Source of the DNA: Bispira polyomma | Taxonomy: Eukaryota | Assembly (NCBI GenBank): GCA_965649765.1 | Contig: OZ287761.1 | Location: 13,144,001-13,208,000, forward strand | Reading direction: 5' to 3' | Length of the DNA stretch: 64,000 nucleotides | Shown: piece after piece, positions 1 to 48,698 of the stretch | How positions within the stretch are numbered: position 1 is the first letter of the stretch | How the letters are laid out: each line of letters opens with the position of its first letter | Made by a program: the position numbers and the translations under genes | Notes under the pieces: generated by a model | What the model saw: only the letters and a program-made list of their open reading frames with translations | Told to the model about the DNA's origin: nothing | Database searches by the model: none

Positions 1-28
1 TCAAAAAAATGAAAAAAAAAAACCTTAC

Positions 29-3000
29 CAGCCGTTTTCGTCGCTTAAAAATTGGTCCGCCGTCGAGGCTTTTGGACATAAGCTTCTTGCCGAAGAAGAG
101 CCTCTTCTGCGACGCCCGCAGGTTGCTCATCACCTTGTTGACGGCCTTGCGGAACTTGGTGTCTTCCTTCTGCTTCCTATGCTTCTTCTGTTCCCCCAGA
201 TACCACTCCAAATCGTAGCGCATCTTGTTGTTCTCCTCCGCAGGAAATGGGAACTGGGTCATCATCCCGTGGACGCTTTGCGTCAGCTTCAGGTTGGTCA
301 CGTCCCCGCCGTGGAAGCTGTAGCCGTACTCCTCCATGTAGGTGTCTCGGGGCACCTCCAGACTCCTGGCTCTTCTGAAGTCTTGCTGCTTCTTACTACT
401 ACTAGATTTCCCGAGCTTTGTTGTATTGTTGCTGTTGTTCTTGTTCCTAGTGATGACAGTGGACTCTGTAGTATACGAATCGTGGCATGCCTCGCTGGTG
501 GATTCATCTATTATGCAATTTAGAGAAGAAGTATTTCCACGATTGTTCGAGGTGGATTCGATGAAGCTCAGACTCTTGCTGCGGTTCTGAAGAAACTTCC
601 GCTTTTTTTTGGTGCTACATGAAACTGTCAAACTTGTTGACGTGTCTTCACTCGGAAGAGTAGTAATGTTACTGGACCTACCAGTGTCCTTTTTGGCACA
701 ATCTTTTTCTTCGCTGTTTAATTCTGCAGTTATTTCTCTGCTTAAAGGCGAGTGTATGGTGCACTGAGTAGTCAGTTGCAGATACTGAGAGTTTGGACCC
801 CTACTAGTTTGGCCATATGACTGTCTTGAACCAGGGCCTGCTGGCTTTTTCTTGGTTTTCTTCTGTTCTATTTCTTTAATTTTGGCCCTCGTATAGTTCA
901 ACAATACGCCAAGATCCACACTCTGGGTCATTGGTGAAGAACTCGATAAGTTAGAACTATGGACCCGCTGCACTACTGAGTGTTCAGCAAAATTTGTGGT
1001 TTCTCTCTTCGATTTACCTTCACCCAACGATTTGAGCTCTGGAAGACATTGAAATTCATCACCTGCTGCACTGTCCTCATCATCATACTGGTCGAATACA
1101 TCAGCAGTAGTAGTTTTTACCCTGTTCATCATGCCACGCTTTTTTAATGGAAAGGCAGTTTCTGAATCGGAATATCTTCTGTTTCGCCTACTACTGTGCG
1201 ATGATTGTTGCACTTCTTTGGCAGATAGAGATCTTTCCCACATTCCTCTCTCTCCCGCATTGCTTTCGTATGATAATAGCTTTTTGAGTTTTGCCTCATC
1301 ATAAGATTGTGAAAGCATGTGGTCCTGAGCAGGTGTGTAGCCCTGCTTTAGGAACCTGCCATAGTTCAAATGTGAATTTGCAGAATATTGAAACCAATCC
1401 CTCTTTTGGTCGTTCTCAGTTGGTAACAAATATCTACTTCCCTGTGAGTACCCAGCGTACCTTGGGTGATTCTTTGCAGGGTTCGCTGACCTCAACTCTT
1501 TTAAGCAATGCTTACTCTTGCATTGTTCAGGCAGAGCAATCCTTAATAACCTGGCTGACTGTACTGTTCCTAAGTTTGAATAGTTTAATTTCCTGCTTCT
1601 ATTACTATTATTACCACCAGTATTGCAGCTTTCCAAACTGTCAGAACTCAGTGATCCATCGGAAGTCAGTGATGACAACGCATAAGAATCTTCACTTTCA
1701 AACGAACTAGCCACAAGATGGCCAGTGTCACCTGTGATTTTACTGATGTTTGGAGGGTGACATTTTGTATTGTCAAGGCTCCTTGAATACACAGTCTTTA
1801 TGAAATGTTTAATAAACACACGGTCTCTGGAATGGTTTCTCTTTAGATCAACATTCTTGATATTTTGCCCACCACTCCAGCTGGTGTCGATACCTGAGCT
1901 TTGAGAGTCCTGAGAAGTTCCTAAACTTTGCAACTTTGGTTTACATTGGGAGCCTTTCGAACTTTGACACAAACTTAGACTGCTCTGACACATGGCAGAG
2001 TTCTTATTCAGCAGTGGGGAATGCAACATCTTCACACTTATGATCACTTTCTGCCTACAATCTTCCTTCCACTGTGTCTTTTCTGCTGATATATATTTTG
2101 TCTTAACTTCCTTTACAGATGGCCGCAGATCAGAAACTGGGAAGCTACAATTCATTTCCGTATTCCGTTCAAACATTTGAAACGATGACATACTTTTAGA
2201 AGAGCTGTTTTGATGTATCTGTCTTTGCGACTTTTTCTTCTCTGTAACTATGTCTGCAGCAGTGGGTATACCTGAGTATTTGTTAAGCAGTAGTTCTTTC
2301 TTATTTTGTGGATCATCATTTTCGCTTCCGCTAAACACATTCGGTCGCCCTGATAGTGAAATATATCCTTCTAGCAAATCACTTGCATAAGAAGCCATTC
2401 GTTGTGGTGTTCTACTTTTATCAGTTTTTCTTTTATCGACTGACAGATTACTAGACTTAGCTGAAGTAGTTTTAAAATTATAACCTTTATATCCAGTACC
2501 TTTGTTTCCTTGATTATCTATCTGGGTCAAGTAGGATGGTCTTATGGCAGGTCTTCTGACATTTCTTTCACCTGGTTTTTTCTGAGAAGAGCTTCTACTA
2601 ATCTTTGGTGAGTTTTTCAGTATACCTGGCCTCGGCCATTTCATAGCAGCTGTCACATTAGATGTATCACAGTGGTTTTCAGGTGACTGAGAACCTTCAC
2701 GTCCTACATTAAGGTACAAATTGTTACCGGCTGTGCCAACCAATTCTGGTTCACTCTTTGATCTGCCAGTTCGTAAGTCTCCAGGACTGGGAGCCAGATT
2801 GTGATACCCAAAGGTTGAAACAAGACTTCCTCGCTGGTTCATGTATGAATCGTCATAGATGCCACATTCACACACCAGACGGTTATTGCCATTCACTTTG
2901 CTAATAAGAGATCTACACAATGGCAAAGAGGGATCTTCATCTACGAAACTTTTAAGCCTTTCTTCTAACGGAGTGAACACTACCCCTTCACTGCTACAAT

Positions 3001-4423
3001 TTTGGTTTTGCAATACCTTTAATACGGACGATTTCTGATCATCGGTAGAATTAGAATTGACGAGGCTTTCTGGACTATAGTCATGCTTCAGTATGTTACC
3101 TGAAATAGTAAATACCCCTGTGTCATTCCCTGTGATTATGCCAGCATTATGTAGATCCCCCGACATTTGTTGGAGCTGGGAGTAGTCATCCACTAAAATG
3201 TCTGCTTTGTCCAAGGGAATGTTGCGAAGGCCAAGATCACCTGAAAAGCTAAAAGGCTGCTGCGCTCTACCAAATTTTGTCTTTTGATTTGGAATTGGAA
3301 TGAAGTACTGATCCGATTCATCACATATTGCTGTTGGAGTCAACGTAAAACCTCTGGCATCAGGAATTAGTCTTCTATCATAAGTGAGACCATATCCAGG
3401 AAAGGTCAAGGAATCCATACTGGCTGTGAGCGTTGAGGATCCACTACTTTCGCAAACCGTCCGAAAATCCAAATTTCCAGGTGACCGATGACTTTCTTGT
3501 AGAAGATACGGAATTCCTGAGTGCAATAATGAGCTAGCATTATGTCCAAAGTTTGTAGGTACACTTGACGGAATACTGGTGTAATGTTCGGCTGGTACTG
3601 ACCTGAGCTGCAATTCAACGGGAAGAGAACATCTTGGCTTCTTGTACACTTTGGATGATTTCGGACTTAGACTTTTTAAACCTTTATTAGGAAAATCAGC
3701 ATATTCTGGAACAGTGGTGGTACGACCATCGTCCAAAATATATTCAGAATCATGCAACCGCCGAATATTAGCATTTACTGAATGCTCGCTATGCTTCAAG
3801 TTTAAACTGTTTTTTCGATTTGAAACAGCAGCTCCTGTCTTCTGCTGGACATGGGACTGAAGGGGTTCCATTTCCAGGGCGGGATGTCCTAAAGGTCTAA
3901 GCACTTTGGGCACAGCTTTTGTTGTTGCTGTTGAATCAGACCGCAGAGCCGAATCGCAATCTTGGTCCTGCACATACCCGCCATTCCAAAATGTCTGGAA
4001 TGGTTCCGGTTCCGCTTCCAAGTGTTGGCTACCCTTTGCAGTGTTTGGTTCCAATCCAGTTGTTCTACACAATTCACACGCACATTTACTTGACTTTTGT
4101 AAATTGCTTTTTGTAATCTCTGGCTTTGCCGCCACCGAGTCCTTCTGCGAGTTATAGTAGGGCCTACTATTGTAGAACAGAAAGTCATTCCCTTCACCAT
4201 CCCTAGAATCAAACATCCCAACATCAGTCGACCTGCTTGAATTCGGTCCAACTTGCACCACATTTCTATGCACACTTTTGACAGGGGGCTTTGCAACTTT
4301 GACATTTTCTGACTTTTTGCCATACTTAGTATACCAAGCAGTATACATCACTATGTAGAGAGACTTAGCAACAACAGGTAATTTCCACTCCACTTCCTCA
4401 TAATGAGGTGACGAGTAACACAT
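29..4423 (-). CDS. Giant coding exon (1465 codons, Ser/Lys/Asn-rich, likely disordered); probable alternative N-terminal exon of the Cav-beta (CACNB) gene; continues by splicing beyond the window start
   Basis: Read codon by codon: no stop in this minus frame from the TAG at 4438-4436 to the window edge. First ATG 4423 (MCYSSPHYEEVEWKLPVV...); second ATG 4348 has better context (MYTAWYTKYGKK...). Ends ...KLMSKSLDGGPIFKRRKRL with a phase-0 donor CTG|GTAAGG at 29/28 followed by T-rich intron. Coding status is strongly supported by length; assignment to CACNB is inferred from strand, position and phase. Confidence 0.88.
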
Positions 4424-4535
4424 ACAGATCAAAGACTAGTCACAGGACCAACAGACAAGACTTGTGTCAATTCTCTTTCTTCAGAAGAGCCGTGGGTTAG
4501 AACGTTTCACTCTTTTTAATTTGAGTACCAATTAT

Positions 4536-6549
4536 AACTAGAAAACGGTTTTTGATAACAAAAACGAAGCGTCCCTAAAGTTGAAATAATAATGAAATTG
4601 TTTAGTGTACAAGGTTTGATATTGTTTAAAAGTTGACATATAAGCAGAATCAGCACTTTTGGTCAATGTAAGCTCGAAAAGGATCACCATTTCCGAGATA
4701 ACAGACGTTTTCTAAAAAGACGCAGAAATTGAAGATGGTTGCCCAAATCAAAAATTACTATAAAAATTTACATAAAAGAAAATTCAGCCCCATGAGTCGA
4801 AAAGGAGCTTGAAATCGCTCTATCTAGCACCGTTTCTGAGATAAAGGACATTTTCGAAAAAGACGCAGAAATTCAAGATGGCCGCCAAAATGTAACATTT
4901 TTTTAAAAGTTTAAATATAAGCAAAATCAACCCTGTGGATTGAAAATGAGCTCGAAATCGATCTATCTAGTACCGTTTCCAAGATAAATGACATTTTCGA
5001 AAAAGACGCAGAAATTCAAGATGGCCGACAAAATTAAAATTTTTAAAAAAGTTTACATATAAGCAAAATCAACCCTGTGGGTCGAAAATTTGCTCGAAAT
5101 CGCTCTATCTAGCAGCCTTTCCGAGATAAAGGACATTTTCGTAAAAGTCCCAGAAATTCAAGATGGCCGCCAAAATGTAACATTTTTTTAAAAGTTTACA
5201 TATAAGCAAAATCAACCCTGTGGGTCGAAAATGAGCTCAAAATCGCTCTATCTAGCAGTCTTTCCGAGATAAAGGACATTTTCGTAAAAGTCCCAGAAAT
5301 TCAAGATGGCCGCCAAAATTAATAATTTTTTGAACGATTACATATAAGCAAAATCAACCCTGTGGGTTGAAAATTAGCTGGAAATCGCTCTATCTAGCAC
5401 CGTTTCCGAGATAACGGACGTTTTCGAAAAAGACACAGAAATTCAAGATGGCCGCCAAAATTGAAAATGTTTTAAAAGTTTACATATAAGCAAAATCAAC
5501 CCTGTGGGTCGAAAATTAGCTCGAAATCACTCTATCTAGCACCGTTTCCGAGATAACTAACATTTTCGAAAAAGACGTAGAAATTCAAAATGGCCGCCAA
5601 AATTAATAATTCATTAAAAGTTTATGTATAAGCAAAATCAACCCTGTGGGTTGAAAATGAGCTCAAAATCGCTCTGTCTAGCACCGTTTCAGAGAAATCG
5701 TTTTATATCAGTAACGATCGCATATTTTTGGATGGGGTAAAAAATAAATAAAAATTCAGGCTATTCTTTAAAAGTTACGCGCTGCATATACTGGTCTAAA
5801 ATTAAAAATAAAAAAAATCCTCACACGCTCAAAAAAGCACCCATCAACACATTTTGTTCAATTGATCGACCCTGTCAATCAGTCAATTATGACCAGATTG
5901 ATCTAAAAATTTACGGACATCTATGCTTTGGTATTTGCAATGTGCATGCCAAATTTCATTGAACTATGACAAGTACTTCAAAAGAAAAGTTGATAAAAGT
6001 GCAAGATAGAGCAAAATAGAGCAAAATACTCATTTGAAGTACTCAGTACTCATTGAGTACTGGACTTAGAACTGTGAAATTTTTACATCATACATAAAAT
6101 CAAAAAGTAGATGAATAACTTATACCAAGAAAAAGCCGAAATCCCAATAGTTTCCGAGACAGCAAAAAAGTACCGATTTTTCGCATTTCAATAAAAATCA
6201 ATCGGTTGGCAATCGGTCAATTATCATCCGATTAATCTCATCAGCGTCTCCCGTCCTGAAAATTGCCTTACCAAGGTACATACCAAATTTCATTAAGCTA
6301 TGATGAATACTTTTTGAGAAAACCTAGTGACAAGCACTTTTACACCCCCAGGGTCACCTGACATTTAAGTAGGCCAAAGTTCAAAGCCAAGAATATCAAA
6401 AAAATTTCCCACTCCTGGTTAAGAGAACTGCCAAAAATAATTTTGATGCAGATAATATTGAAGGAGATATTCAAGGAAGACCATGCGGCGGCGGCGGCGA
6501 GGAAACCAGGGGTGAAACCAAATAACCGCCCTTTTCAAGGGACGCTTAA
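4536..6549 (-). mobile_element. Non-autonomous Helentron/DINE-1-type element (HINE) with internal satellite
   Basis: Subterminal inverted repeats AAGCGTCCCT (4567-4576) and AGGGACGCTT (6538-6547). On the minus strand: 5' palindrome CCCTTGAAAAGGG, (GCC)n microsatellite near 6485-6499, tandem core repeats, 3' hairpin GTTTTTGTTATCAAAAAC and CTAGTT terminus. No TSD seen. Confidence 0.85.
4625..5695. repeat. Tandem array of 142-143-bp units (about 7.5 copies) inside the HINE
   Basis: Motif AAGATGGCCGCC (with minor variants) recurs at 4875, 5018, 5160, 5303, 5445 and 5587, plus a degenerate copy near 4733. Confidence 0.95.
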
Positions 6550-8227
6550 GTAGTAGAGAACGGATATTCTAACATGACACGGCAGTGTTGGCGATTCTGA
6601 TTGGCCTACAGCCTCGGTAAAATTAACTGTATACCCATAAACGGAAATAGACAAAGTTCACCTAAAGTGTACTGGATCCCCAGTACATATAGTTCCTCCA
6701 ATAACATAATTTTTCAGTGAAAGTAGCCTGAATCAGAAATAATAATTTGTCATGTTAAAATAGGAATAACCAAATAAATCCAAAGCTTGATATACAGTAA
6801 TTTTTACCTCTGTCATTGGTTATTCCTATAATATAACGGTATCCAAAATCAACACTTATAGAGACAGATGTAGTCTTCTCTTGTAATCTTTTTGTTATGT
6901 GTTCATCCTTGTGACACAATATCACTGTAGATCCATGTCTTTCACAATTCAGATTACAATACAACATATTATTACAGAGTAAATTATTCATTCAAAATAA
7001 CAGATACAGTGTCAGACTGTCTTCATAAATCCATTCTTTCCTACAAATGTACGTCTTTATTTCATATTTTTGTACTTGTTTAGTTTTAAGATTATCCTTT
7101 CTTCCACACTAGAGAACCAAAAAGTTCTACTAATATATAAAAGTTTCCATTGTTAATTTGGTCTTTTTACAGAATATCTTTTGTAAGAAAGATATTGACA
7201 CGGATGAGGTTCGCCATTGTTATCCTTCGTAATACACACGCCCTACATTTTATAACTTGCAAATGCATTGAAGAAGAAATAATACTGCATAGTTAACTCA
7301 CCAATCAATTAACATAATTCCTTCCCCTTTTCTTTTAGCCAGATCATACCCAAGTCTTATTATACTTCTTGCTCGTCCAAAATCAATTCCCTTACTCCAG
7401 TGTCAGATATTTAGTGTTTACATTACAACTAAAAGTAATCTATTTAACCAATGCTAAGTTATTATACTCCTGGTGGTAATATTTGCTCACACAAGTCTTT
7501 AATGAAATGAAGATGATATTAGTAGCTGTACTTAAAAGAAAGTAAGGTTCCCCACCACACGACTTGGGAGGTAAAATGTATTCTTTAATGGACTTGTCTG
7601 CAGTTATGAAACTAATCCTTCAGTTTCATCAATAGAGAAAAGTCCGAAAACAGATGTCAGTTTCCAAAGTCTCTTTCATAATTTCGCCCGCAGGCAACGG
7701 TTCCGAAATTATCACTCACGAACAATTCAAACTGTGTACACAGGCAATTTGTGTATTTTACAGAAGGGGGAACAGCAGAAAAATATTTTTCCTCAGTAAA
7801 TGTTATTGGAGGGGAGGGTTGTTGTTTTTTTTGTTTGGGAATGAATAACAGTGTTTCGCTTAAAGGTGACTTGGGCTATGAGACCTAAGAGCACAATTCA
7901 CACTTGATTTGCTATTGAATTGTAGCCAAAGCCTTTTAAATGCTACTTCTGTATTGAAGCAATATCTCACAATGGACCGAATGCCCACTGGCTAGGATCA
8001 ATCACTTCGACAAGTGTGATTATACATATGTACACAGAGTAAGAGAGATTATAACAGTGGATCGTGCTCCAAGTCGAAGTTGAAAAAAAAATGTTTCCAA
8101 TTTACTGCTTGTTCGGCGAAGGGCCAATTTTAGTTCTACCAACTTCAACAATGACAGCAATTACAAAAGTGGCCGTAAAGCCTGTATTTTGGATCATATT
8201 CAACTTTTTCTACTTTACTACCATATT

Positions 8228-8590: not shown

Positions 8591-10857
8591 GTTGGTTTCA
8601 GTAGGTTCCACTTGGTTCTAGGAATTTGACTTACACTGGTTTTATATTTAACGAATATACTATAAATGCTTTATATTTTAAAAAATAAATATGTAACAAT
8701 AAAAATGTTTTGTTTTTTTAATATTGTTTAAACAGATGCTCGAGTAAAGATCAGACATATCAATTGACGCCCTTTCTTTATTCAGAGATTTATGTAATGT
8801 GAATGTTTAATATTTTGGAAATGAACAGAATAGAATTGTGTCTTTAGTCTTTACACAGAGTAATTCTTAGGAGGGGAGTAATCACACATAAAGGTAACAG
8901 TAGGACTGCATTATATCATCAAAATGACCCTTCTTTAAACCTCAACAAGGAATTTGAATGAAAGGCTTTGCTGTTTTTGTGGTACAAACATTGGCCATTT
9001 TTTAGAGCTTAAGGGACAGTCAGGTTCTATATGCCTTACACCTGGGCTTGTATTCACAAATATGCCTTATTTGGCTCAATCAATTTGATTGGCTGAAGAT
9101 ATTGTTTCAAAGAAGCCGATTGGCTGAGATTAAGTAACTTTTAAGAATTGTATTCTAGGAATGTTTCTGAATATAATGGCCCATGGTTATTTCTCTCAAA
9201 AAGTGGGCCCTTGGTAAATCGCCTCCAGTCATAGCTACTTTGCACGAGTCAAACTTTCAAAGTTTTCCTGATATTTTACATTGTAAAATTGTCAGGACAT
9301 TCTGGCAGTTTCTCTGTCAAATTACTTTCAGTTATAGCCATATTCAACTTATGATATACTACAAGCTATGCAAGCAAATTCGTATTTATAGAGCAAGAGA
9401 AGATTTGTACAAGTTTTTACAAAAGAGGTAGTCTTCATACAGATACATAATGTGGCGTTCACACCTTCACGCTTTATAGAGCCATTTTAACTCCCGATTT
9501 CAAGAGCTTGTATGTGATCTTTGATTCTTTAAACTATCTCTCTGCATACATTCTGTATACCCCGATCCATCATCTAAGGTAATAGTCTGACGTAATAGTC
9601 TTTTGAGAAAAGCAGTTTTAACTTTGCATTTAAATTCTCGGTTTGTTCGACGACCATTAGTAATGCGCATTCAAAGCCCGTCATTGGTAATTTTTATTTT
9701 GAGGCAAGAAATAAACTCATTTGTTTTATAGTTCATGCTACAGATTTAAGTACTTAAACACAAAACAAACAAATTGAAGAGACTAACTTCCCAAAATTGT
9801 TTCCTAAATTACCAGGATTATTTACAGTTTTCTATAGCAATTTTGTCGTTTTTCGTGCTGACTAAGCTGTTAGTTACATTTTCTTCATACAATCGGCATA
9901 TAAAAGATACAGACTATATATAACTTCTTGGTTTTATATATTACTGTAAAATACTTAATGGGACAAAAATGAAGGTAAAAAAACATCATTCTAGCACAAG
10001 TAGACCTAAATGAGTGCTAATATGACTGATTTGCACTTGGTGAACACACCTTAAATATGCAACAATGTAATTACCAGTAGGGTCAATACTCAGAAGCCAC
10101 CTGCGGCTTGCTCTAAACCACCTGACTGCTGTCACTGCTAGTAGCCTTGATAAGACTCTAATTCTTAATAATTATAACCTTTCACTCAATGCAGTGGGTC
10201 AGGTCTTGTGATTTGTGGTCAAACAAGCGTTACCTTGACAGGTAATGATGTCATAATTAAATTGCAACAACCTGGTTTGGGTGATATTGTCATTTATAGA
10301 AGTGGTCTGTGGCTTGCTCTAAACCACCTGAATGTCACTAGCTAGCGCTAGCCTCGATAAGACTCCATATTACAGTGTGTGATTTGATGGCAGTCCCCTT
10401 TTGCAATTTGCCACTAACTTCTGGTATGGTAGAGTAACTTTTAAAAATTTAAAAGCCCACTTGCAAGTAACTTTTTCGGGCAAAACATTTTTTTAAATGT
10501 GAATTTGCGATTTTCACAAGTTTTGCTGTGTTACCTTTCTCCATCTAGCGAGGTAACAAGCAATTGATTGTGTGATAGGTGTCAAACACAAATTTAAGAA
10601 AGTCCAGTAAAAGAAAAACAACATCTTCTAACAGATATATAAATACATATTGGTAATATATAAATGTCTTTAGTCTCATTTGTTGCATATATTATAACTA
10701 CAGAAAGTGACGTTCAAATACAAAGTCCAGCTTTCAACCAACCCTATCTTCACAGTTTGGTCATATGACCCTACCCATTCTGTCTAAAAAGTCGGAATGG
10801 TTTAGAACAGTTCTAAATGGTATTGCTACTAATCTAACGACGGGAACACATATTTCC

Positions 10858-34030: not shown

Positions 34031-34108
34031 CTGTCTGATAAAACTGTTTGAACTATCAGAGAAGCTTCCATCTGACCGCTTGGCTTTGCCATGCCTCTTT
34101 CCTTTCGT
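34031..34108 (-). CDS. CACNB: Voltage-gated calcium channel beta subunit, internal N-terminal exon (equivalent of vertebrate CACNB exon 2)
   Basis: Acceptor ttttattttcAG| at 34109/34108, donor CAG|GTACTT at 34031/34030, 78 nt, phase 0/0. Translation TKGKRHGKAKRSDGSFSDSSNSFIRQ matches CACNB1 ([25 protein letters not shown]), which ends at the same residue before the GSA(D/E)S exon. Confidence 0.9.
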
Positions 34109-40409: not shown

Positions 40410-41967
40410 GTACATAAATTTATTGAAGAAGATATATATATAAGGAAGAGATTGTATGAAAAAAAGTGTAAATTAAAAAGTAGTTATACATACATAGAGA
40501 TAAAAGTAATAAAATAAACTAAAGGAAACACAAGATATTGAATAGAATAGTTTACAAGTTGTAAACAGTTTAAAAAGATATGTCTTAAACAATTTTTTGT
40601 AAATTATGGCAAGAGATGGCAGATCTAATATGGGCAGGTAATTTGTTCCACTTTCTTGGCATGACTAATTAAAATAATTGCGTAGATGTGCTGGACCTTA
40701 ATAGATGTTCCTGAATTTCGATCCAATAGAGGTGCAACAGTTCTGATAAATCAGATGGAGCTTTATTGTTCAAAGATTGTTAAACATATGTTACAAAAAA
40801 GAACGCGTTCATTTACAGGTAGCCAGTGTATCTTGATTAAATACTCTTTGGCAGTGTCCATTGAACTAGCTTCATATATTGGTCTTGTGGCAATCTGGAA
40901 TCTTTTGTAAATGGTGAATATTCCTCTGTTTTTTTTTTGTACCAACCAGTAGAATACAGCAATAGTCTAAGTGCTATATTACAATAGCTTGAACTAGTGA
41001 TTTACATGCACCAACTTTCTGATTCTCTTCAACTTTCTTAATTGTCCTTGGTTGGTAGCAGCTTTTTTCTTTACAGAGACATCTGTGTTCATGTTTTCAT
41101 CAAAATATGCACCAAGATTCCTGACTGAGGACACATATTTATTGTGCAGTCACCAACTGTAATTTCTATGCTGGCATATTTTAAAGATGGTATATAAACT
41201 TAGATCCAAATAGTGGCACTTCTCTTTTGCTGTCATTTAGCTTAAGCATATTAGTTTTCATCCAGTTCTGGATATCCGCAGCACACTTTTCTAGCTGAGC
41301 CAGATTTATTAGGATTAGTAGAAACACATAGAGTTGACTATCGTCTGCATAAAACATAATTTCCAGATTGTAAAAATGAGCAATATCCGATAAAGGTGCA
41401 ACATATAATGTGAAGAGCAAAGGTCCCATGGCAGACTGATCCCTGTGGTACTCCAAAAAAGAAGTTATTTTATCCAATGTTCTGCCATTGATTAGAACTC
41501 TCTGAATTATGTGGTGTAGATAAGACTTAAACCATTCTAAACAAGTGTAAGTGATCCAAAATCTTAATGACAGTTTTTTAAGTAGAATCTCATGATCAAT
41601 TGTGTCAAAAGAAGCGCATAAATCCAGAAGGATAAGTGCTACCTGTTTCTTGCTTGAAATTGATTAAGTAATGTCACTGTGCAGCATAGTAGGCAAGTTT
41701 CTGTTGAGTAACATTCATGGTAGGCCAATTGAGTTTTTTCCCCTAAAATGTTGGAGATGATATGTTAGTCGAAGAGCTACAGCTTTCTCATTTATATTTT
41801 AAATGAATGGCAGGTTGCTAACTGGTTAATATTTCCTTAAATAAATTTTTAAATTAAAAGTTATCTTTTTTAATTAATGGAGTAATGTGTGCACGTTTCT
41901 GTGATGATGCAAATATACCAGTTTTAAGATATTTATTAACCATTTATGTAATAATCGGCACTAAGGA
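40410..41967 (-). mobile_element. L2/CR1-clade LINE relic, RT to 3' end
   Basis: [30 protein letters not shown] and HWLPV motifs with stops and frameshifts; AATAAA near 40420. Confidence 0.85.
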
Positions 41968-43577
41968 GACTACATGTTCACTGACAAGTCCAGTCCTGAT
42001 TCTGCCCAGGCAGCTTTTACCTCCTTACAGAACTCCTTTGTAAATGTACAACACTGGATGGCTGCAAATAAACTCAAGCTGAACCCCGACAAGACTGAGT
42101 TTATTTTTTTTGGCTCCGAGTCGCAACAGGAAAAACTGTCCACCTGTTTCCCAGTTGATATTCTTGGAAGCAAGCTTTTTCTAACTGACAAAGTACACAA
42201 CCTGGGCATGTTGTTCGACTCTGAATTCTCCTTCTCCAACCATGGTGCATCCATGTGTAGGTCATGTTTTGTTGGCCTCCGTGATTTCAGGCAAATTCAA
42301 CGTTATCTTACCAAATTCATTGCAATCACTGTTGCCAATGCCTTGATTACTGCAACTCTCTGTTCCATTCCCTATCTAGTAATGATCTCAGACCCCTTTA
42401 GAATGTTCAACACTCACTGGCTCCCATTGTGGCCAAATCTTCTAAATTTTCTCATTAATACTCCTGTACTCAAGTCACTCCACTGGCTCCTAATAAAATA
42501 TTGTGTTGCTTTCCAAAGTGCAACAATTTTATGTAAATTTCTAAATTCCAGATTACCCACTTATTTCAGCCCCCATCTATCCAAATATACATGCTCAGTC
42601 AAGACTAGGCGCAGTAACACTGATAAGTTATATCCTAATATTTTCACTGTCGACCCTTGCATCCACAAATCCAAAGTACATTTTAAAAATTGCCTAGCTC
42701 ATGATAACCCCTTCATATGGAACGGCCTGCCTGATCATTTTCGCATGGCTCAAACTTTCTCCTCTTTCAGGAGTAAGCTGAAGGCCGACCTTTTTGAACA
42801 GGCCTTTCTACTCTAGCAGTCGCAACTATTCCAGCAGTCTTCCTGGTTATGACCACCATCCGTTCACAGATTTTTGGGCAGGCTGCGTGTAACCAACACA
42901 CATATTAGATGGATATGTCCTGTGTCTGTCCGTCAACATTTTGATTGCCTGACATTTAAAGGAAAACTATTTGAGGTATCATCACAAAATTTGTTGTGGA
43001 CGTGTATCATGTCAATAGCTTAGTTGGAATTGTATTTGGGCCCATTCCAAAAAACAAGATGGCCGTGGCGGCTATTATTACCAAATTTGTTGTCGAGGTG
43101 TATCATGGTAATAGCTTGGTTTGGATTCTATTTGGGCCCATTCTGAAAAACAAGATGGCCGCCACGGCTATCTTGAAAACGGTTTTCTCTTATTTAAAGG
43201 AAAAGTATTGCAGCTATCATCGCCAAATTTGTTGTGGAGGTGTATTATGTCAATAGCTTGGTTGGGATTAGATTTGGGCCCATTTTGAAAAACAATATGG
43301 ACGCCCTGATCTGAAAAGCGTTTTTTTTTTTAAAAAATGGCTGCTGTATGTCCGTGTGTCTGTCCGTCAACATTTTATTTTCCGGACTCTAACTCCAAGA
43401 CACTTCTGCCGATCAATTTGAAAATTTGACAGAGCTGTAGGACTAACCCTGATACCAATTGCGCAACCCGCCTTTTTGCGGTCTATAACCCCACTTGTTG
43501 ATTAATACTTAGGTTTTCGCACCTTAGAATTCGTTGTACGTAGATTAAGTGCTTTAAAAGTACAACTAGATTAGATA
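41968..43577 (+). mobile_element. 5'-truncated L2-like LINE inserted into the minus-strand LINE
   Basis: ORF 41974-42816 (WMAANKLKLNPDKTEFI, LKSLHWL, WNGLP, FRSKLKADLF); 3' UTR split by a HINE; (TAGAT)n tail at about 43567-43576. Confidence 0.85.
42871..43499 (+). mobile_element. HINE/DINE-1-type element in the LINE 3' UTR
   Basis: T-run, subterminal repeats GGGCAGGCTGCG / GCGCAACCCGCC, GTCTGTCCGTC microsatellite relic, internal AAAACAAGATGGCCG repeats, 3' hairpin and CTTGTT end. Confidence 0.8.
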
Positions 43578-47594: not shown

Positions 47595-48698
47595 TTAAGG
47601 TACAAATAATTAACTTAGATGATCACCTATCATCTTCCATAAAGCTCTCATATGGAGTACCCTAGGGATCCTTCCTTGGCCCTCTACTTTTTACCCTTTA
47701 TACACATCCTCTCAGCACTGTCATCAATAAACACAATATTAAACACCACATGTATGCAGATGACACTCAACTCTATCTCTCTCTCTCAATCTGCAAAATG
47801 CAAATACAAACATAGACCGACTTGCAGACTGTCTGTCTGATGTCCAGGCGTGGATGAACTACTCCAAACTAAAACTCAATCCTGACAAAACAGAATTCAT
47901 CCTCATTGGAAATAAGGAAAACTGTGAGCTCCTAACATTTTTGTTTCCCATCTTCCTGCTGGGAAAAGACATACTACCTTCTGAAAATGCCAAAAACCTG
48001 GGTGTGACTTTTGATTCAACTTTTTCATTTGACACTCAGATTGCCAACATCTGTTCCTCCTGCTATTAGCATATATGCGACATCAAAAGAATCAGAAACC
48101 ACCTGTCCATGGACACAGCGATAACTGTGGCAAATGCCCTTGTGAGTAGCCGCCTCGACTACTGCAACTCTCTCTTGTACAGAACAAACAAGTCACACAT
48201 TAAAAAGCTTCAGTCCATCCAAAACTACCTATGTAGGGTAATTTTTCGCCTGGGTTGTCCCACAGCATCACTCCTTACCTCAAAAAATTACACTGGCTAC
48301 GTTACTACTTCTGAGGCTGTAGTCACTCAACAGCCCCCTACCTTGCCTCCCTTCTCTCCTTCAGTAAAACCAAGAGAGGCAACAGACTCTCCGTCATTCC
48401 TGTCAGACCAATCAGGAAGGCGGGATTCAGAGCGTTCTCCACTGCAGCTCCATGGTTATGGAACAATCTCCCAGTCGACCTCAGATCAGTTGACACACTT
48501 ATCGGTTTTAGGAAAAAGCTTAAAACCTATCTTTTTAACCTTGCCTACCCACCTTAGCTTCCCTCGTGCATGCTCCCACTTCCTTCCTTACAACTTTGCA
48601 ATTTCCATGGACTTAATGATTAGACCAATGATTCTGCTATTGCGCTTTAGAAGATGCCTGGCAGTAAAGTACGTTAAAAATTATTAATAATAATAATA
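47595..48698 (+). mobile_element. 5'-truncated L2-like LINE
   Basis: [36 protein letters not shown] and SRLDYCNSLL motifs; (TAA)n tail at 48683-48698. Confidence 0.9.

What the first reader, a model, noticed from the sequence alone, without database searches (positions are those of the whole stretch)
29..4435. Hidden 4.4-kb exon in the Cav-beta intron: candidate giant calcium-channel beta-subunit isoform
Seen: 1469 sense codons with no stop (4435 to 29, minus strand) in AT-rich DNA, closed by a phase-0 CTG|GTAAG donor. It lies on the same strand as, and about 30 kb downstream of, a recognisable CACNB exon 2. The ORF track missed it because no stop falls inside the window. Established: in vertebrate CACNB2/CACNB4 the intron after exon 2 holds short alternative first exons (beta2a, 2b, 2e, beta4a; roughly 15-25 aa) that splice in phase 0 onto the GSADS exon and tune localisation and inactivation. 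Inference: this exon fills the same slot but adds about 1440-1465 mostly disordered residues, roughly tripling a normal beta subunit, analogous to giant ankyrin or big-tau exons. Two models: an alternative first coding exon (ATG 4423 or 4348), or a phase-0/0 cassette using the TAG at 4438-4436 (TCTTGTCTGTTGGTCCTGTGACTAG|) as acceptor. I am not aware of such an isoform being described but cannot check this.
Basis: partly seen in the sequence, partly recalled or inferred. Interest (0 to 1): 0.92.

Follow-up and report, generated by a model that had tools for sequence, protein, structure and literature searches.

The report
Giant calcium-channel beta-subunit first exon
A marine worm's only calcium-channel beta-subunit gene hides a 4.3-kb protein-coding exon, kept intact by selection in a related species, that would give the normally small helper subunit a 1,440-residue floppy front end and a mass near 250 kDa; RNA or protein proof is still missing.

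Summary
In detail: 1,469 open codons (4435-29, minus strand) end in a phase-0 GTAAG donor, between CACNB exon 1b (34108-34031) and the constitutive GSADS exon 29 kb left of the window. CACNB is single-copy, and its exons best match an annelid. A relative's 1.2-Mb contig has a 1,427-codon orthologue in the same intron slot: 47% identical, dN/dS about 0.25 at dS about 1.9, same donor. Homology starts exactly at ATG 4348, so this is an alternative first coding exon (1,440 aa), not a phase-0 cassette. Its last ~110 residues, followed by a phase-0 GTAAG, recur in more distant animals, one with about 4 kb of open frame. The same intron holds four more conserved ATG-led phase-0 exons (473, 62, 34 and 12 aa); the 62-aa one is already in a Paralvinella CACNB gene model. 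The predicted product is about 2,350 aa: a mostly disordered arm with ~23 conserved islands and a basic amphipathic helix beside the core. Likely role: membrane tether plus scaffold (inferred). No RNA was available, so the splice is unproven. I found no description of such an isoform, and the scan's notes hold none on other DNA.

The parts
29..4348 (-). Giant alternative first coding exon of CACNB: ATG 4348 to the last base before the donor; 4,320 nt, 1,440 codons, about 161 kDa, pI about 9.4
   Evidence: syntenic 1,427-codon orthologue, 47% identity, dN/dS 0.25 (bootstrap 0.18-0.32)
23..31 (-). Phase-0 splice donor CTG|GTAAGG; GT at 28-27
   Evidence: TTG|GTAGGT in the relative; phase-0 GTAAG at the equivalent place in L026/L030 and L027; conservation stops at the GT
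29..388 (-). Deeply conserved ~115-residue module next to the Cav-beta core: basophilic Ser site, invariant aromatic/hydrophobic motifs, long basic amphipathic helix, polybasic end (net charge +10 to +14 in the last 45 residues)
   Evidence: 80% identical in the relative (dN about 0.12, dS saturated), 37-46% in three distant animals; single copy in the genome; no Pfam, PDB or fold match
389..4348 (-). Mostly disordered, Ser-rich arm with short conserved islands (about 23 in the whole exon), including a 14-3-3 mode-1-type site at residue 529 and five other conserved RxxS/T sites
   Evidence: FoldIndex below 0 for 75% (own) and 90% (relative) of residues; no transmembrane-like stretch; 53 gap events with both frames open
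4346..4353 (-). Conserved start context: YAG then two bases then ATG in both species (purine at -3; possibly an acceptor for a non-coding leader exon)
4349..4435 (-). 29 open codons upstream of the ATG; not conserved, so 5' UTR or intron rather than protein
   Evidence: alignment score with the relative's upstream 200 nt is 50, against a shuffle mean of 52.5
4536..6620 (.). About 2.1 kb of lineage-specific sequence between the conserved upstream blocks and the ATG; at least 4536-5200 is very-high-copy repeat
   Evidence: summed depth 1e5-1e7 from L002:6036 = window 4536; absent in the relative
6934..7960 (-). Collinear conserved non-coding blocks (7913-7788, 7488-7301, 7016-6934): candidate promoter, leader exon or enhancer; 0.2-1.4 kb from the ATG in the relative
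   Evidence: 70-78% identity, E 1e-5 to 1e-19
10032..10125 (-). Further conserved non-coding block (two CAGGTG boxes), collinear in the relative
   Evidence: 80% over 96 nt, E 3e-12
34031..34108 (-). CACNB exon 1b (A-type N-terminus, 26 codons, phase 0/0)
   Evidence: 88% identical to a mollusc-like Cav-beta; motif described in PMC3972191

Best explanation
The single CACNB gene of this annelid has a set of mutually exclusive first coding exons in the intron between exon 1b and the GSADS exon. One of them is giant. A transcript starting upstream of window 4348 (directly, or through a non-coding leader exon) is translated from ATG 4348 and spliced from the donor at 29 to the phase-0 acceptor of the GSADS exon 29 kb away. 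The product is a Cav-beta of about 2,350 aa (about 255 kDa): 1,440 new residues plus about 909 constitutive ones. SHOWN: open frame, synteny, selection, start, donor phase and sister exons. INFERRED: the splice (about 85%). INFERRED, about 45%: how it works. The SH3-GK core binds the alpha1 subunit as in every Cav-beta. The basic amphipathic helix and polybasic end next to the core tether the subunit to anionic membrane lipids, as beta2e does, possibly released by Ca/calmodulin or phosphorylation. The long disordered arm shows short conserved motifs that recruit kinases, 14-3-3 and cytoskeletal or synaptic partners, so it places and clusters Cav1/Cav2 channels in one cell type rather than mainly changing gating.
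For: Walking a relative's contig from the last CACNB exon found the exons in the same order and a 1,430-codon frame in the same slot. 47% identity, dN 0.47, dS 1.9, ratio 0.25; codon positions 1/2/3 are 62/67/43% identical. Homology begins at the ATG and ends at the GT. All five ATG-led exons in this intron have phase-0 GT donors in both species, matching the phase-0 GSADS acceptor; the chance for five is (1/3)^5. The 62-aa sister exon is at the N-terminus of a Paralvinella CACNB model. Two distant animals keep the module plus a phase-0 GTAAG, and a third has Val at the equivalent codon. Molluscs and vertebrates use this slot for B-type first exons; the snail's is brain-enriched and barely changes inactivation (PMC3972191). 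Beta2e anchors by electrostatics and is released by Ca2+ (PMC9662827). The hydrophobic moment of the helix is among the highest in both proteins (0.54-0.59 against a median of 0.2), and 0.58-0.69 in the distant homologues.
Against: No RNA run exists for this species; the three runs laid are DNA-type contigs that run through the donor. No annotated 806-2564-aa protein with this module was found. The distant homologues lie on contigs of 1.6-4.5 kb, so their link to CACNB is not shown. A 2.1-kb insertion sits about 190 nt upstream of the ATG in this genome, so the promoter or leader structure is unclear. The structure model is weak (mean pLDDT 59.5; only the helix is confident). No binding partner is identified.
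Confidence: 0.82

Rival explanations
1. Nested or truncated product: the giant exon (and perhaps the 473-aa exon) is transcribed on the CACNB strand but splices to its own small terminal exon, or reads through the donor to a nearby stop, giving a disordered protein with no Cav-beta core.
For: A conserved block 700 nt below the 473-aa exon (C14 about 13137990-13137930) has an acceptor-like AG followed by a short frame and stop in both species. Read-through stops lie 3-20 codons past the donor.
Against: Residues after the GT are not conserved in any species. The short frames in that block differ in length (7 and 11 codons) and their stops do not align. The other sister exons are too short to be genes, and one is modelled as a CACNB N-terminus in Paralvinella. 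Both outcomes could coexist as minor isoforms.
Confidence: 0.1
2. Phase-0/0 cassette: exon 1b splices to the TAG at 4438-4436 and the whole 1,469 codons are inserted into the A form.
For: The TAG at 4438 follows a fairly pyrimidine-rich stretch and is in phase 0. The relative also has a phase-0 TAG 27 nt before its ATG.
Against: The two TAGs are at non-equivalent places. The relative's lies in purine-rich sequence with no pyrimidine tract. The codons between TAG and ATG share nothing. Any open frame begins after a stop, and TAG is one of three. Splicing exon 1b to the conserved AG just before the ATG would shift the frame and hit a stop.
Confidence: 0.04
3. The giant exon is an internal exon entered in phase 1 from an unknown upstream coding exon, using the conserved AG three bases before the ATG.
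For: YAG|TN-ATG occurs in both species, and the codon before Met is Val in both (GTG, GTT).
Against: No conserved coding-like block was found in 10 kb upstream in the relative; the conserved blocks there have indels that are not multiples of three. Exons 1a and 1b join in phase 0. A non-coding leader or plain start-context constraint explains the pattern. The product would still be a giant Cav-beta.
Confidence: 0.04
4. Not a functional exon: a chance frame, a transposon ORF or a decayed insertion.
For: A high-copy repeat begins 100 nt upstream of the frame. There is no Pfam match.
Against: The exon is single-copy, with flat single-copy depth, dN/dS 0.25, and both frames open across dS about 1.9 and 53 gap events.
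Confidence: 0.005

Closest known systems
B-type (exon 2) N-terminal isoforms of Cav-beta: Lymnaea LCav-beta-B; vertebrate beta2a, beta2b, beta2e, beta3, beta4a (PMC3972191)
   Same: Same intron slot after exon 1b, own start codon, phase-0 donor to the GSADS exon, several alternatives in one very large intron.
   Different: Known B exons give short N-termini; this one encodes 1,440 residues and a sister exon 315-473. No palmitoylation-type Cys pair at the N-terminus (first Cys at about residue 89).
Cav-beta2e polybasic membrane anchor (PMC9662827)
   Same: Basic, amphipathic segment immediately N-terminal to the GSADS junction.
   Different: No sequence homology shown. Here the basic segment is internal, at the end of a 1,440-residue arm, and longer (about 45-residue helix). 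Membrane binding was not tested.
Giant coding exons: giant ankyrin-G/B, Big tau, MAP2/MAP4, CLIP1, NIN (PMC10901741, PMC7401806)
   Same: A single multi-kilobase, A-rich (33% A) coding exon adds a long, mostly disordered segment with short conserved motifs to a known scaffold-type protein.
   Different: Those are internal cassette exons in vertebrate cytoskeletal adaptors. This is a first coding exon on an ion-channel auxiliary subunit in an invertebrate. No sequence relationship; tissue restriction not tested.

Membership tests
Cav-beta (CACNB) host gene | A-domain (PF12052), SH3, HOOK and GK exons in order on one strand | tested here: met
   ten constitutive exons at C14:13114922-13089368; single copy
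Cav-beta B-type N-terminal exon | Lies between exon 1b and the GSADS exon on the gene's strand | tested here: met
   In the relative it lies 32 kb upstream of the GSADS exon; exon 1b was out of reach there
Cav-beta B-type N-terminal exon | Carries its own start codon | tested here: met
   homology starts at ATG 4348 with a purine at -3 in both species; inferred from conservation, not from translation data
Cav-beta B-type N-terminal exon | Phase-0 donor compatible with the GSADS acceptor | tested here: met
   conserved in the relative and in two distant animals
Cav-beta B-type N-terminal exon | Spliced to the GSADS exon in mRNA, mutually exclusive with exons 1a/1b | not testable with these tools
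   no RNA runs on record; runs X1-X3 are DNA-type
Giant coding exon class (ankyrin/tau type) | Single multi-kilobase coding exon under selection | tested here: met
   4,320 nt; dN/dS 0.25
Giant coding exon class (ankyrin/tau type) | Encodes mostly disordered sequence | tested here: met
   FoldIndex below 0 for 75-90% of residues, against 46% for a Cav-beta core; a crude predictor
Giant coding exon class (ankyrin/tau type) | Internal cassette exon | tested here: not met
   no conserved in-frame acceptor; first-coding-exon anatomy
Giant coding exon class (ankyrin/tau type) | Tissue-restricted (neural, muscle or testis) inclusion | not testable with these tools
   no RNA data
beta2e-type electrostatic membrane anchor | Polybasic amphipathic segment next to the core | tested here: met
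   net +10 to +14 in the last 45 residues and hydrophobic moment 0.54-0.69 in five sequences; helix predicted at pLDDT 70-90
beta2e-type electrostatic membrane anchor | Binds anionic lipids, slows inactivation, released by Ca2+ | not testable with these tools
   needs bench assay
beta2a-type palmitoylated anchor | Cys doublet at the extreme N-terminus | tested here: not met
   no Cys in the first 88 residues from ATG 4348

The most novel reading that the evidence does not exclude
Annelids (perhaps other marine invertebrates too) make a ~250-kDa Cav-beta whose giant first exon turns the channel's auxiliary subunit into its own membrane-cytoskeleton or active-zone scaffold, an independent solution to the job that giant ankyrins or RIM/Bassoon-type proteins do. 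A panel of at least six promoter-chosen N-termini of 12 to 1,440 residues would let one gene stand in for the four vertebrate genes. The ~115-residue module would be an undescribed conserved interaction domain.
Probability: 0.3. Interest if true: 0.86.

Novelty: new variant of a known kind. Interest (0 to 1): 0.72.

Why it matters
Cav-beta subunits are regarded as roughly 500-700-residue proteins whose alternative N-termini are short tags. A selected 1,440-residue N-terminus would be far longer than any I could find in the papers or protein searches available here, and would extend the 'giant exon' strategy from cytoskeletal adaptors to a calcium-channel subunit. It gives a concrete, testable candidate for how invertebrates with one Cav-beta gene place channels in special membrane domains. 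It also shows that gene models miss such exons: the module was found only in unannotated metagenome contigs.

Tried and rejected
RNA evidence: no run is on record as RNA; the three unlabelled runs gave single contigs running through the donor into the intron, so they are DNA. Word-index homologue searches with the last 126-136 residues found nothing at 806-2564 aa and only P0122 at 253-805 aa. These blanks are weak: the relative's own 1,430-aa protein sits in a cluster whose representative is an unrelated 51-aa peptide, so it was invisible to them. ESM Atlas gave no usable hit for the module or for the second long exon. Pfam, PDB sequence and Foldseek searches gave nothing significant. ATG 4423 and the TAG 4438 acceptor were rejected for lack of conservation. 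Chaining the giant exon to the 473-aa exon was rejected: there is a phase-0 AG before it in this genome but not in the relative. A transposon origin was rejected (single copy, purifying selection). No canonical 1-8-14 calmodulin spacing is conserved across all five helices (read), so calmodulin binding stays a guess. SxIP and RVxF motifs are not conserved. The spliced model was searched exon by exon and never joined; the isoform length is a sum of exon lengths. The 100-N gaps in L026 and L030 were left unfilled. Literature searches found no report of a giant Cav-beta; the library lacks most subscription journals, and I did not check Drosophila or schistosome isoform lengths.
Full report
OBSERVATION. 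The minus-strand frame from 4435 to 29 has 1,469 sense codons and ends CTG|GTAAGG. Its read-through stop is 20 codons further, outside the window, so the ORF track missed it. At the exon's base composition the chance of such a frame is about 1e-41. The exon is single-copy and richer in GC (40-46%) than its surroundings.

HOST GENE. The window is C14:13144001-13208000 of a 1.04-Gb animal genome. CACNB exon 1b lies at 34108-34031 with a phase-0 donor. The only PF12052 match in the genome, the GSADS exon, starts at C14:13114922, 29.1 kb past the giant exon's donor, with a phase-0 acceptor. All later exons follow in order down to a 540-codon last exon, and none lies between 4.4 and 34 kb. Exon by exon, the best summed match among ten reference proteins is the annelid Paralvinella, in line with earlier scan notes that call this genome a worm.

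SYNTENIC ORTHOLOGUE. The last exon found an 86%-identical relative on a 1.2-Mb contig of a public metagenome assembly. Walking upstream on that contig passed the CACNB exons in order and reached a 1,430-codon frame 32 kb above the GSADS exon, on the same strand. It is 47% identical over 1,344 columns. From ATG to donor it has 1,427 codons against 1,440 here. dN is 0.47, dS 1.9, ratio 0.25 (bootstrap 0.18-0.32); codon positions 1, 2 and 3 are 62, 67 and 43% identical; the last 112 codons have dN 0.12 with dS saturated. dS is near saturation, so the ratio is approximate, but the direction is clear. Both frames stay open across 53 gap events, while most intron sequence does not align. The exon is therefore protein-coding and under purifying selection.

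ENDS OF THE EXON. Identity runs to the last codon before GT in both species and then stops: the read-through tails are 20 and 3 unrelated codons. At the other end it starts at the codon before ATG 4348. The 29 codons upstream are not conserved (score 50 against a shuffle mean of 52.5), and the relative's frame is closed 9 codons before its ATG. This favours a first coding exon from ATG 4348 and disfavours the cassette model. Both species have YAG two bases before the ATG, which may be an acceptor for a non-coding leader. That would explain why about 2.1 kb of lineage-specific sequence, at least partly high-copy repeat (4536 to about 6620), could enter between the ATG and the conserved non-coding blocks at 6.9-7.9 kb. 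Exon 1b spliced to this AG would be out of frame.

SISTER EXONS. The same intron holds four more conserved ATG-led exons, each with a phase-0 GT donor in both species: 473 aa (315 in the relative; acidic, 55% identical, with an internal duplication here), 34 aa, 62 aa and 12 aa. A sixth, of 16 aa, lies after the GSADS exon. The 62-aa exon matches the N-terminus of the Paralvinella CACNB gene model at 20 of 25 residues. This is the known layout of B-type first exons in molluscs and vertebrates (PMC3972191), and it is the best indirect evidence that the giant exon splices to the GSADS exon.

DEEPER CONSERVATION. The last 140 residues found three proteins in other metagenome contigs (E 4e-20, 5e-14, 5e-8). 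Two have DNA. In both, the module is followed by a phase-0 GTAAG at the equivalent place. In L030 the frame is open from the contig start for 689 codons up to a 100-N gap, and another frame is open from the gap to the donor, about 4.2 kb in all; L026 from the same kind of sample is similar with the gap elsewhere. I left the gaps unfilled. L027 is open from its start for 429 codons. So the exon seems to be giant in at least one distant lineage too. These contigs are too short to show CACNB, and the animals are unidentified; one sample accession appears in marine biofilm papers.

PROTEIN. The exon encodes about 161 kDa, 14% Ser, pI 9.4, no transmembrane-like stretch, and 75-90% predicted disorder. 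About 23 short islands are nearly invariant between the two species, the pattern expected of linear motifs. They include six RxxS/T sites, one of them a 14-3-3 mode-1-type site at residue 529. The final module has invariant aromatic motifs and a predicted 45-residue helix (pLDDT 70-90 at its centre; the model overall is weak). Its last 45 residues carry +10 to +14 net charge and a strong hydrophobic moment in all five sequences. No Pfam, PDB, Foldseek or Atlas match was found. With about 909 constitutive residues the isoform would be about 2,350 aa.

MECHANISM. Shown: a selected coding exon with first-exon anatomy in the B slot. Inferred with about 85% confidence: splicing to the GSADS exon. 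Inferred with about 45%: function as tether plus scaffold. The core binds alpha1 as in all Cav-beta subunits (established). A polybasic segment at this position anchors beta2e to anionic lipids and is released by Ca2+ (PMC9662827). Snail N-termini affect gating little but are tissue-specific (PMC3972191), which points to localisation. Giant exons in ankyrins and MAPs give tissue-restricted scaffolds (PMC10901741). No partner is identified here.

LIMITS. There is no RNA evidence either way. Only one syntenic relative was examined, and exon 1b was out of reach on its contig. The blank protein searches are weakened by a clustering artefact that hid even the relative's protein. Five literature searches found no giant Cav-beta, within an open-access library.

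VERDICT. Real, selected, and very probably a giant alternative N-terminus of the worm's only Cav-beta. It is a new variant of two known kinds, the B-type first exon and the giant disordered exon. Interest 0.72.

Noticed in passing
L003:4693-6111 minus (C14:13140111-13138693); relative L035:10001-10945: Second large alternative first exon: 473 aa here, 315 aa in the relative, acidic, 55% identical, dN 0.35 with dS saturated, phase-0 donor AAG|GTATT in both; an internal segment of about 75 residues is duplicated in this genome. No Pfam or Atlas match.
   Followed up: partly
C14:13130464-13130363, 13123065-13122880, 13115331-13115296 (left of window): Three short conserved ATG-led phase-0 exons (34, 62, 12 aa). 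The 62-aa exon has partial or decayed tandem copies just downstream in both species and is present in the Paralvinella model.
   Followed up: partly
C14:13112687-13112640: Conserved 16-codon ATG-led phase-0 exon after the GSADS exon; it would give a Cav-beta that lacks the A domain and starts at the SH3 exon.
   Followed up: partly
L008:5368-6987 minus (C14:13090987-13089368): The last CACNB exon is itself unusually long (540 codons; 465 in the relative), His/Gly/Ser-rich, dN/dS about 0.10, ending in a PDZ-ligand-like tail shared with molluscs.
   Followed up: partly
window about 4084-4067 and about 2870-2860, minus: Small Cys clusters kept in both species (CxCxxC at residues ~89-94; CxC near residue 496): possible metal-binding or acylation sites.
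   Followed up: no
C14:13110607-13110194 and 13092870-13092739: Broken partial tandem copies of the SH3 exon (three, each with a stop) and of a GK exon lie next to the real exons.
   Followed up: no
C14 about 13137992-13137928; relative L035:11474-11537: Conserved 65-nt block with an acceptor-like AG, ATG and early stop; could be a minor terminal exon or a non-coding element.
   Followed up: partly
window 41184-42816 and 47764-48687: Decayed reverse-transcriptase fragments of non-LTR retrotransposons in the CACNB intron upstream of exon 1b (judged from the translations only).
   Followed up: no
C14:13085265-13082950 minus (L008/L009): Frames resembling a DIRS-type retroelement (tyrosine recombinase and RNase H-like text) just downstream of CACNB; judged from the translations only.
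   Followed up: no
P0128 cluster: Database artefact: the relative's 1,430-aa protein is clustered under an unrelated 51-aa peptide, which hides it from homologue searches.
   Followed up: yes
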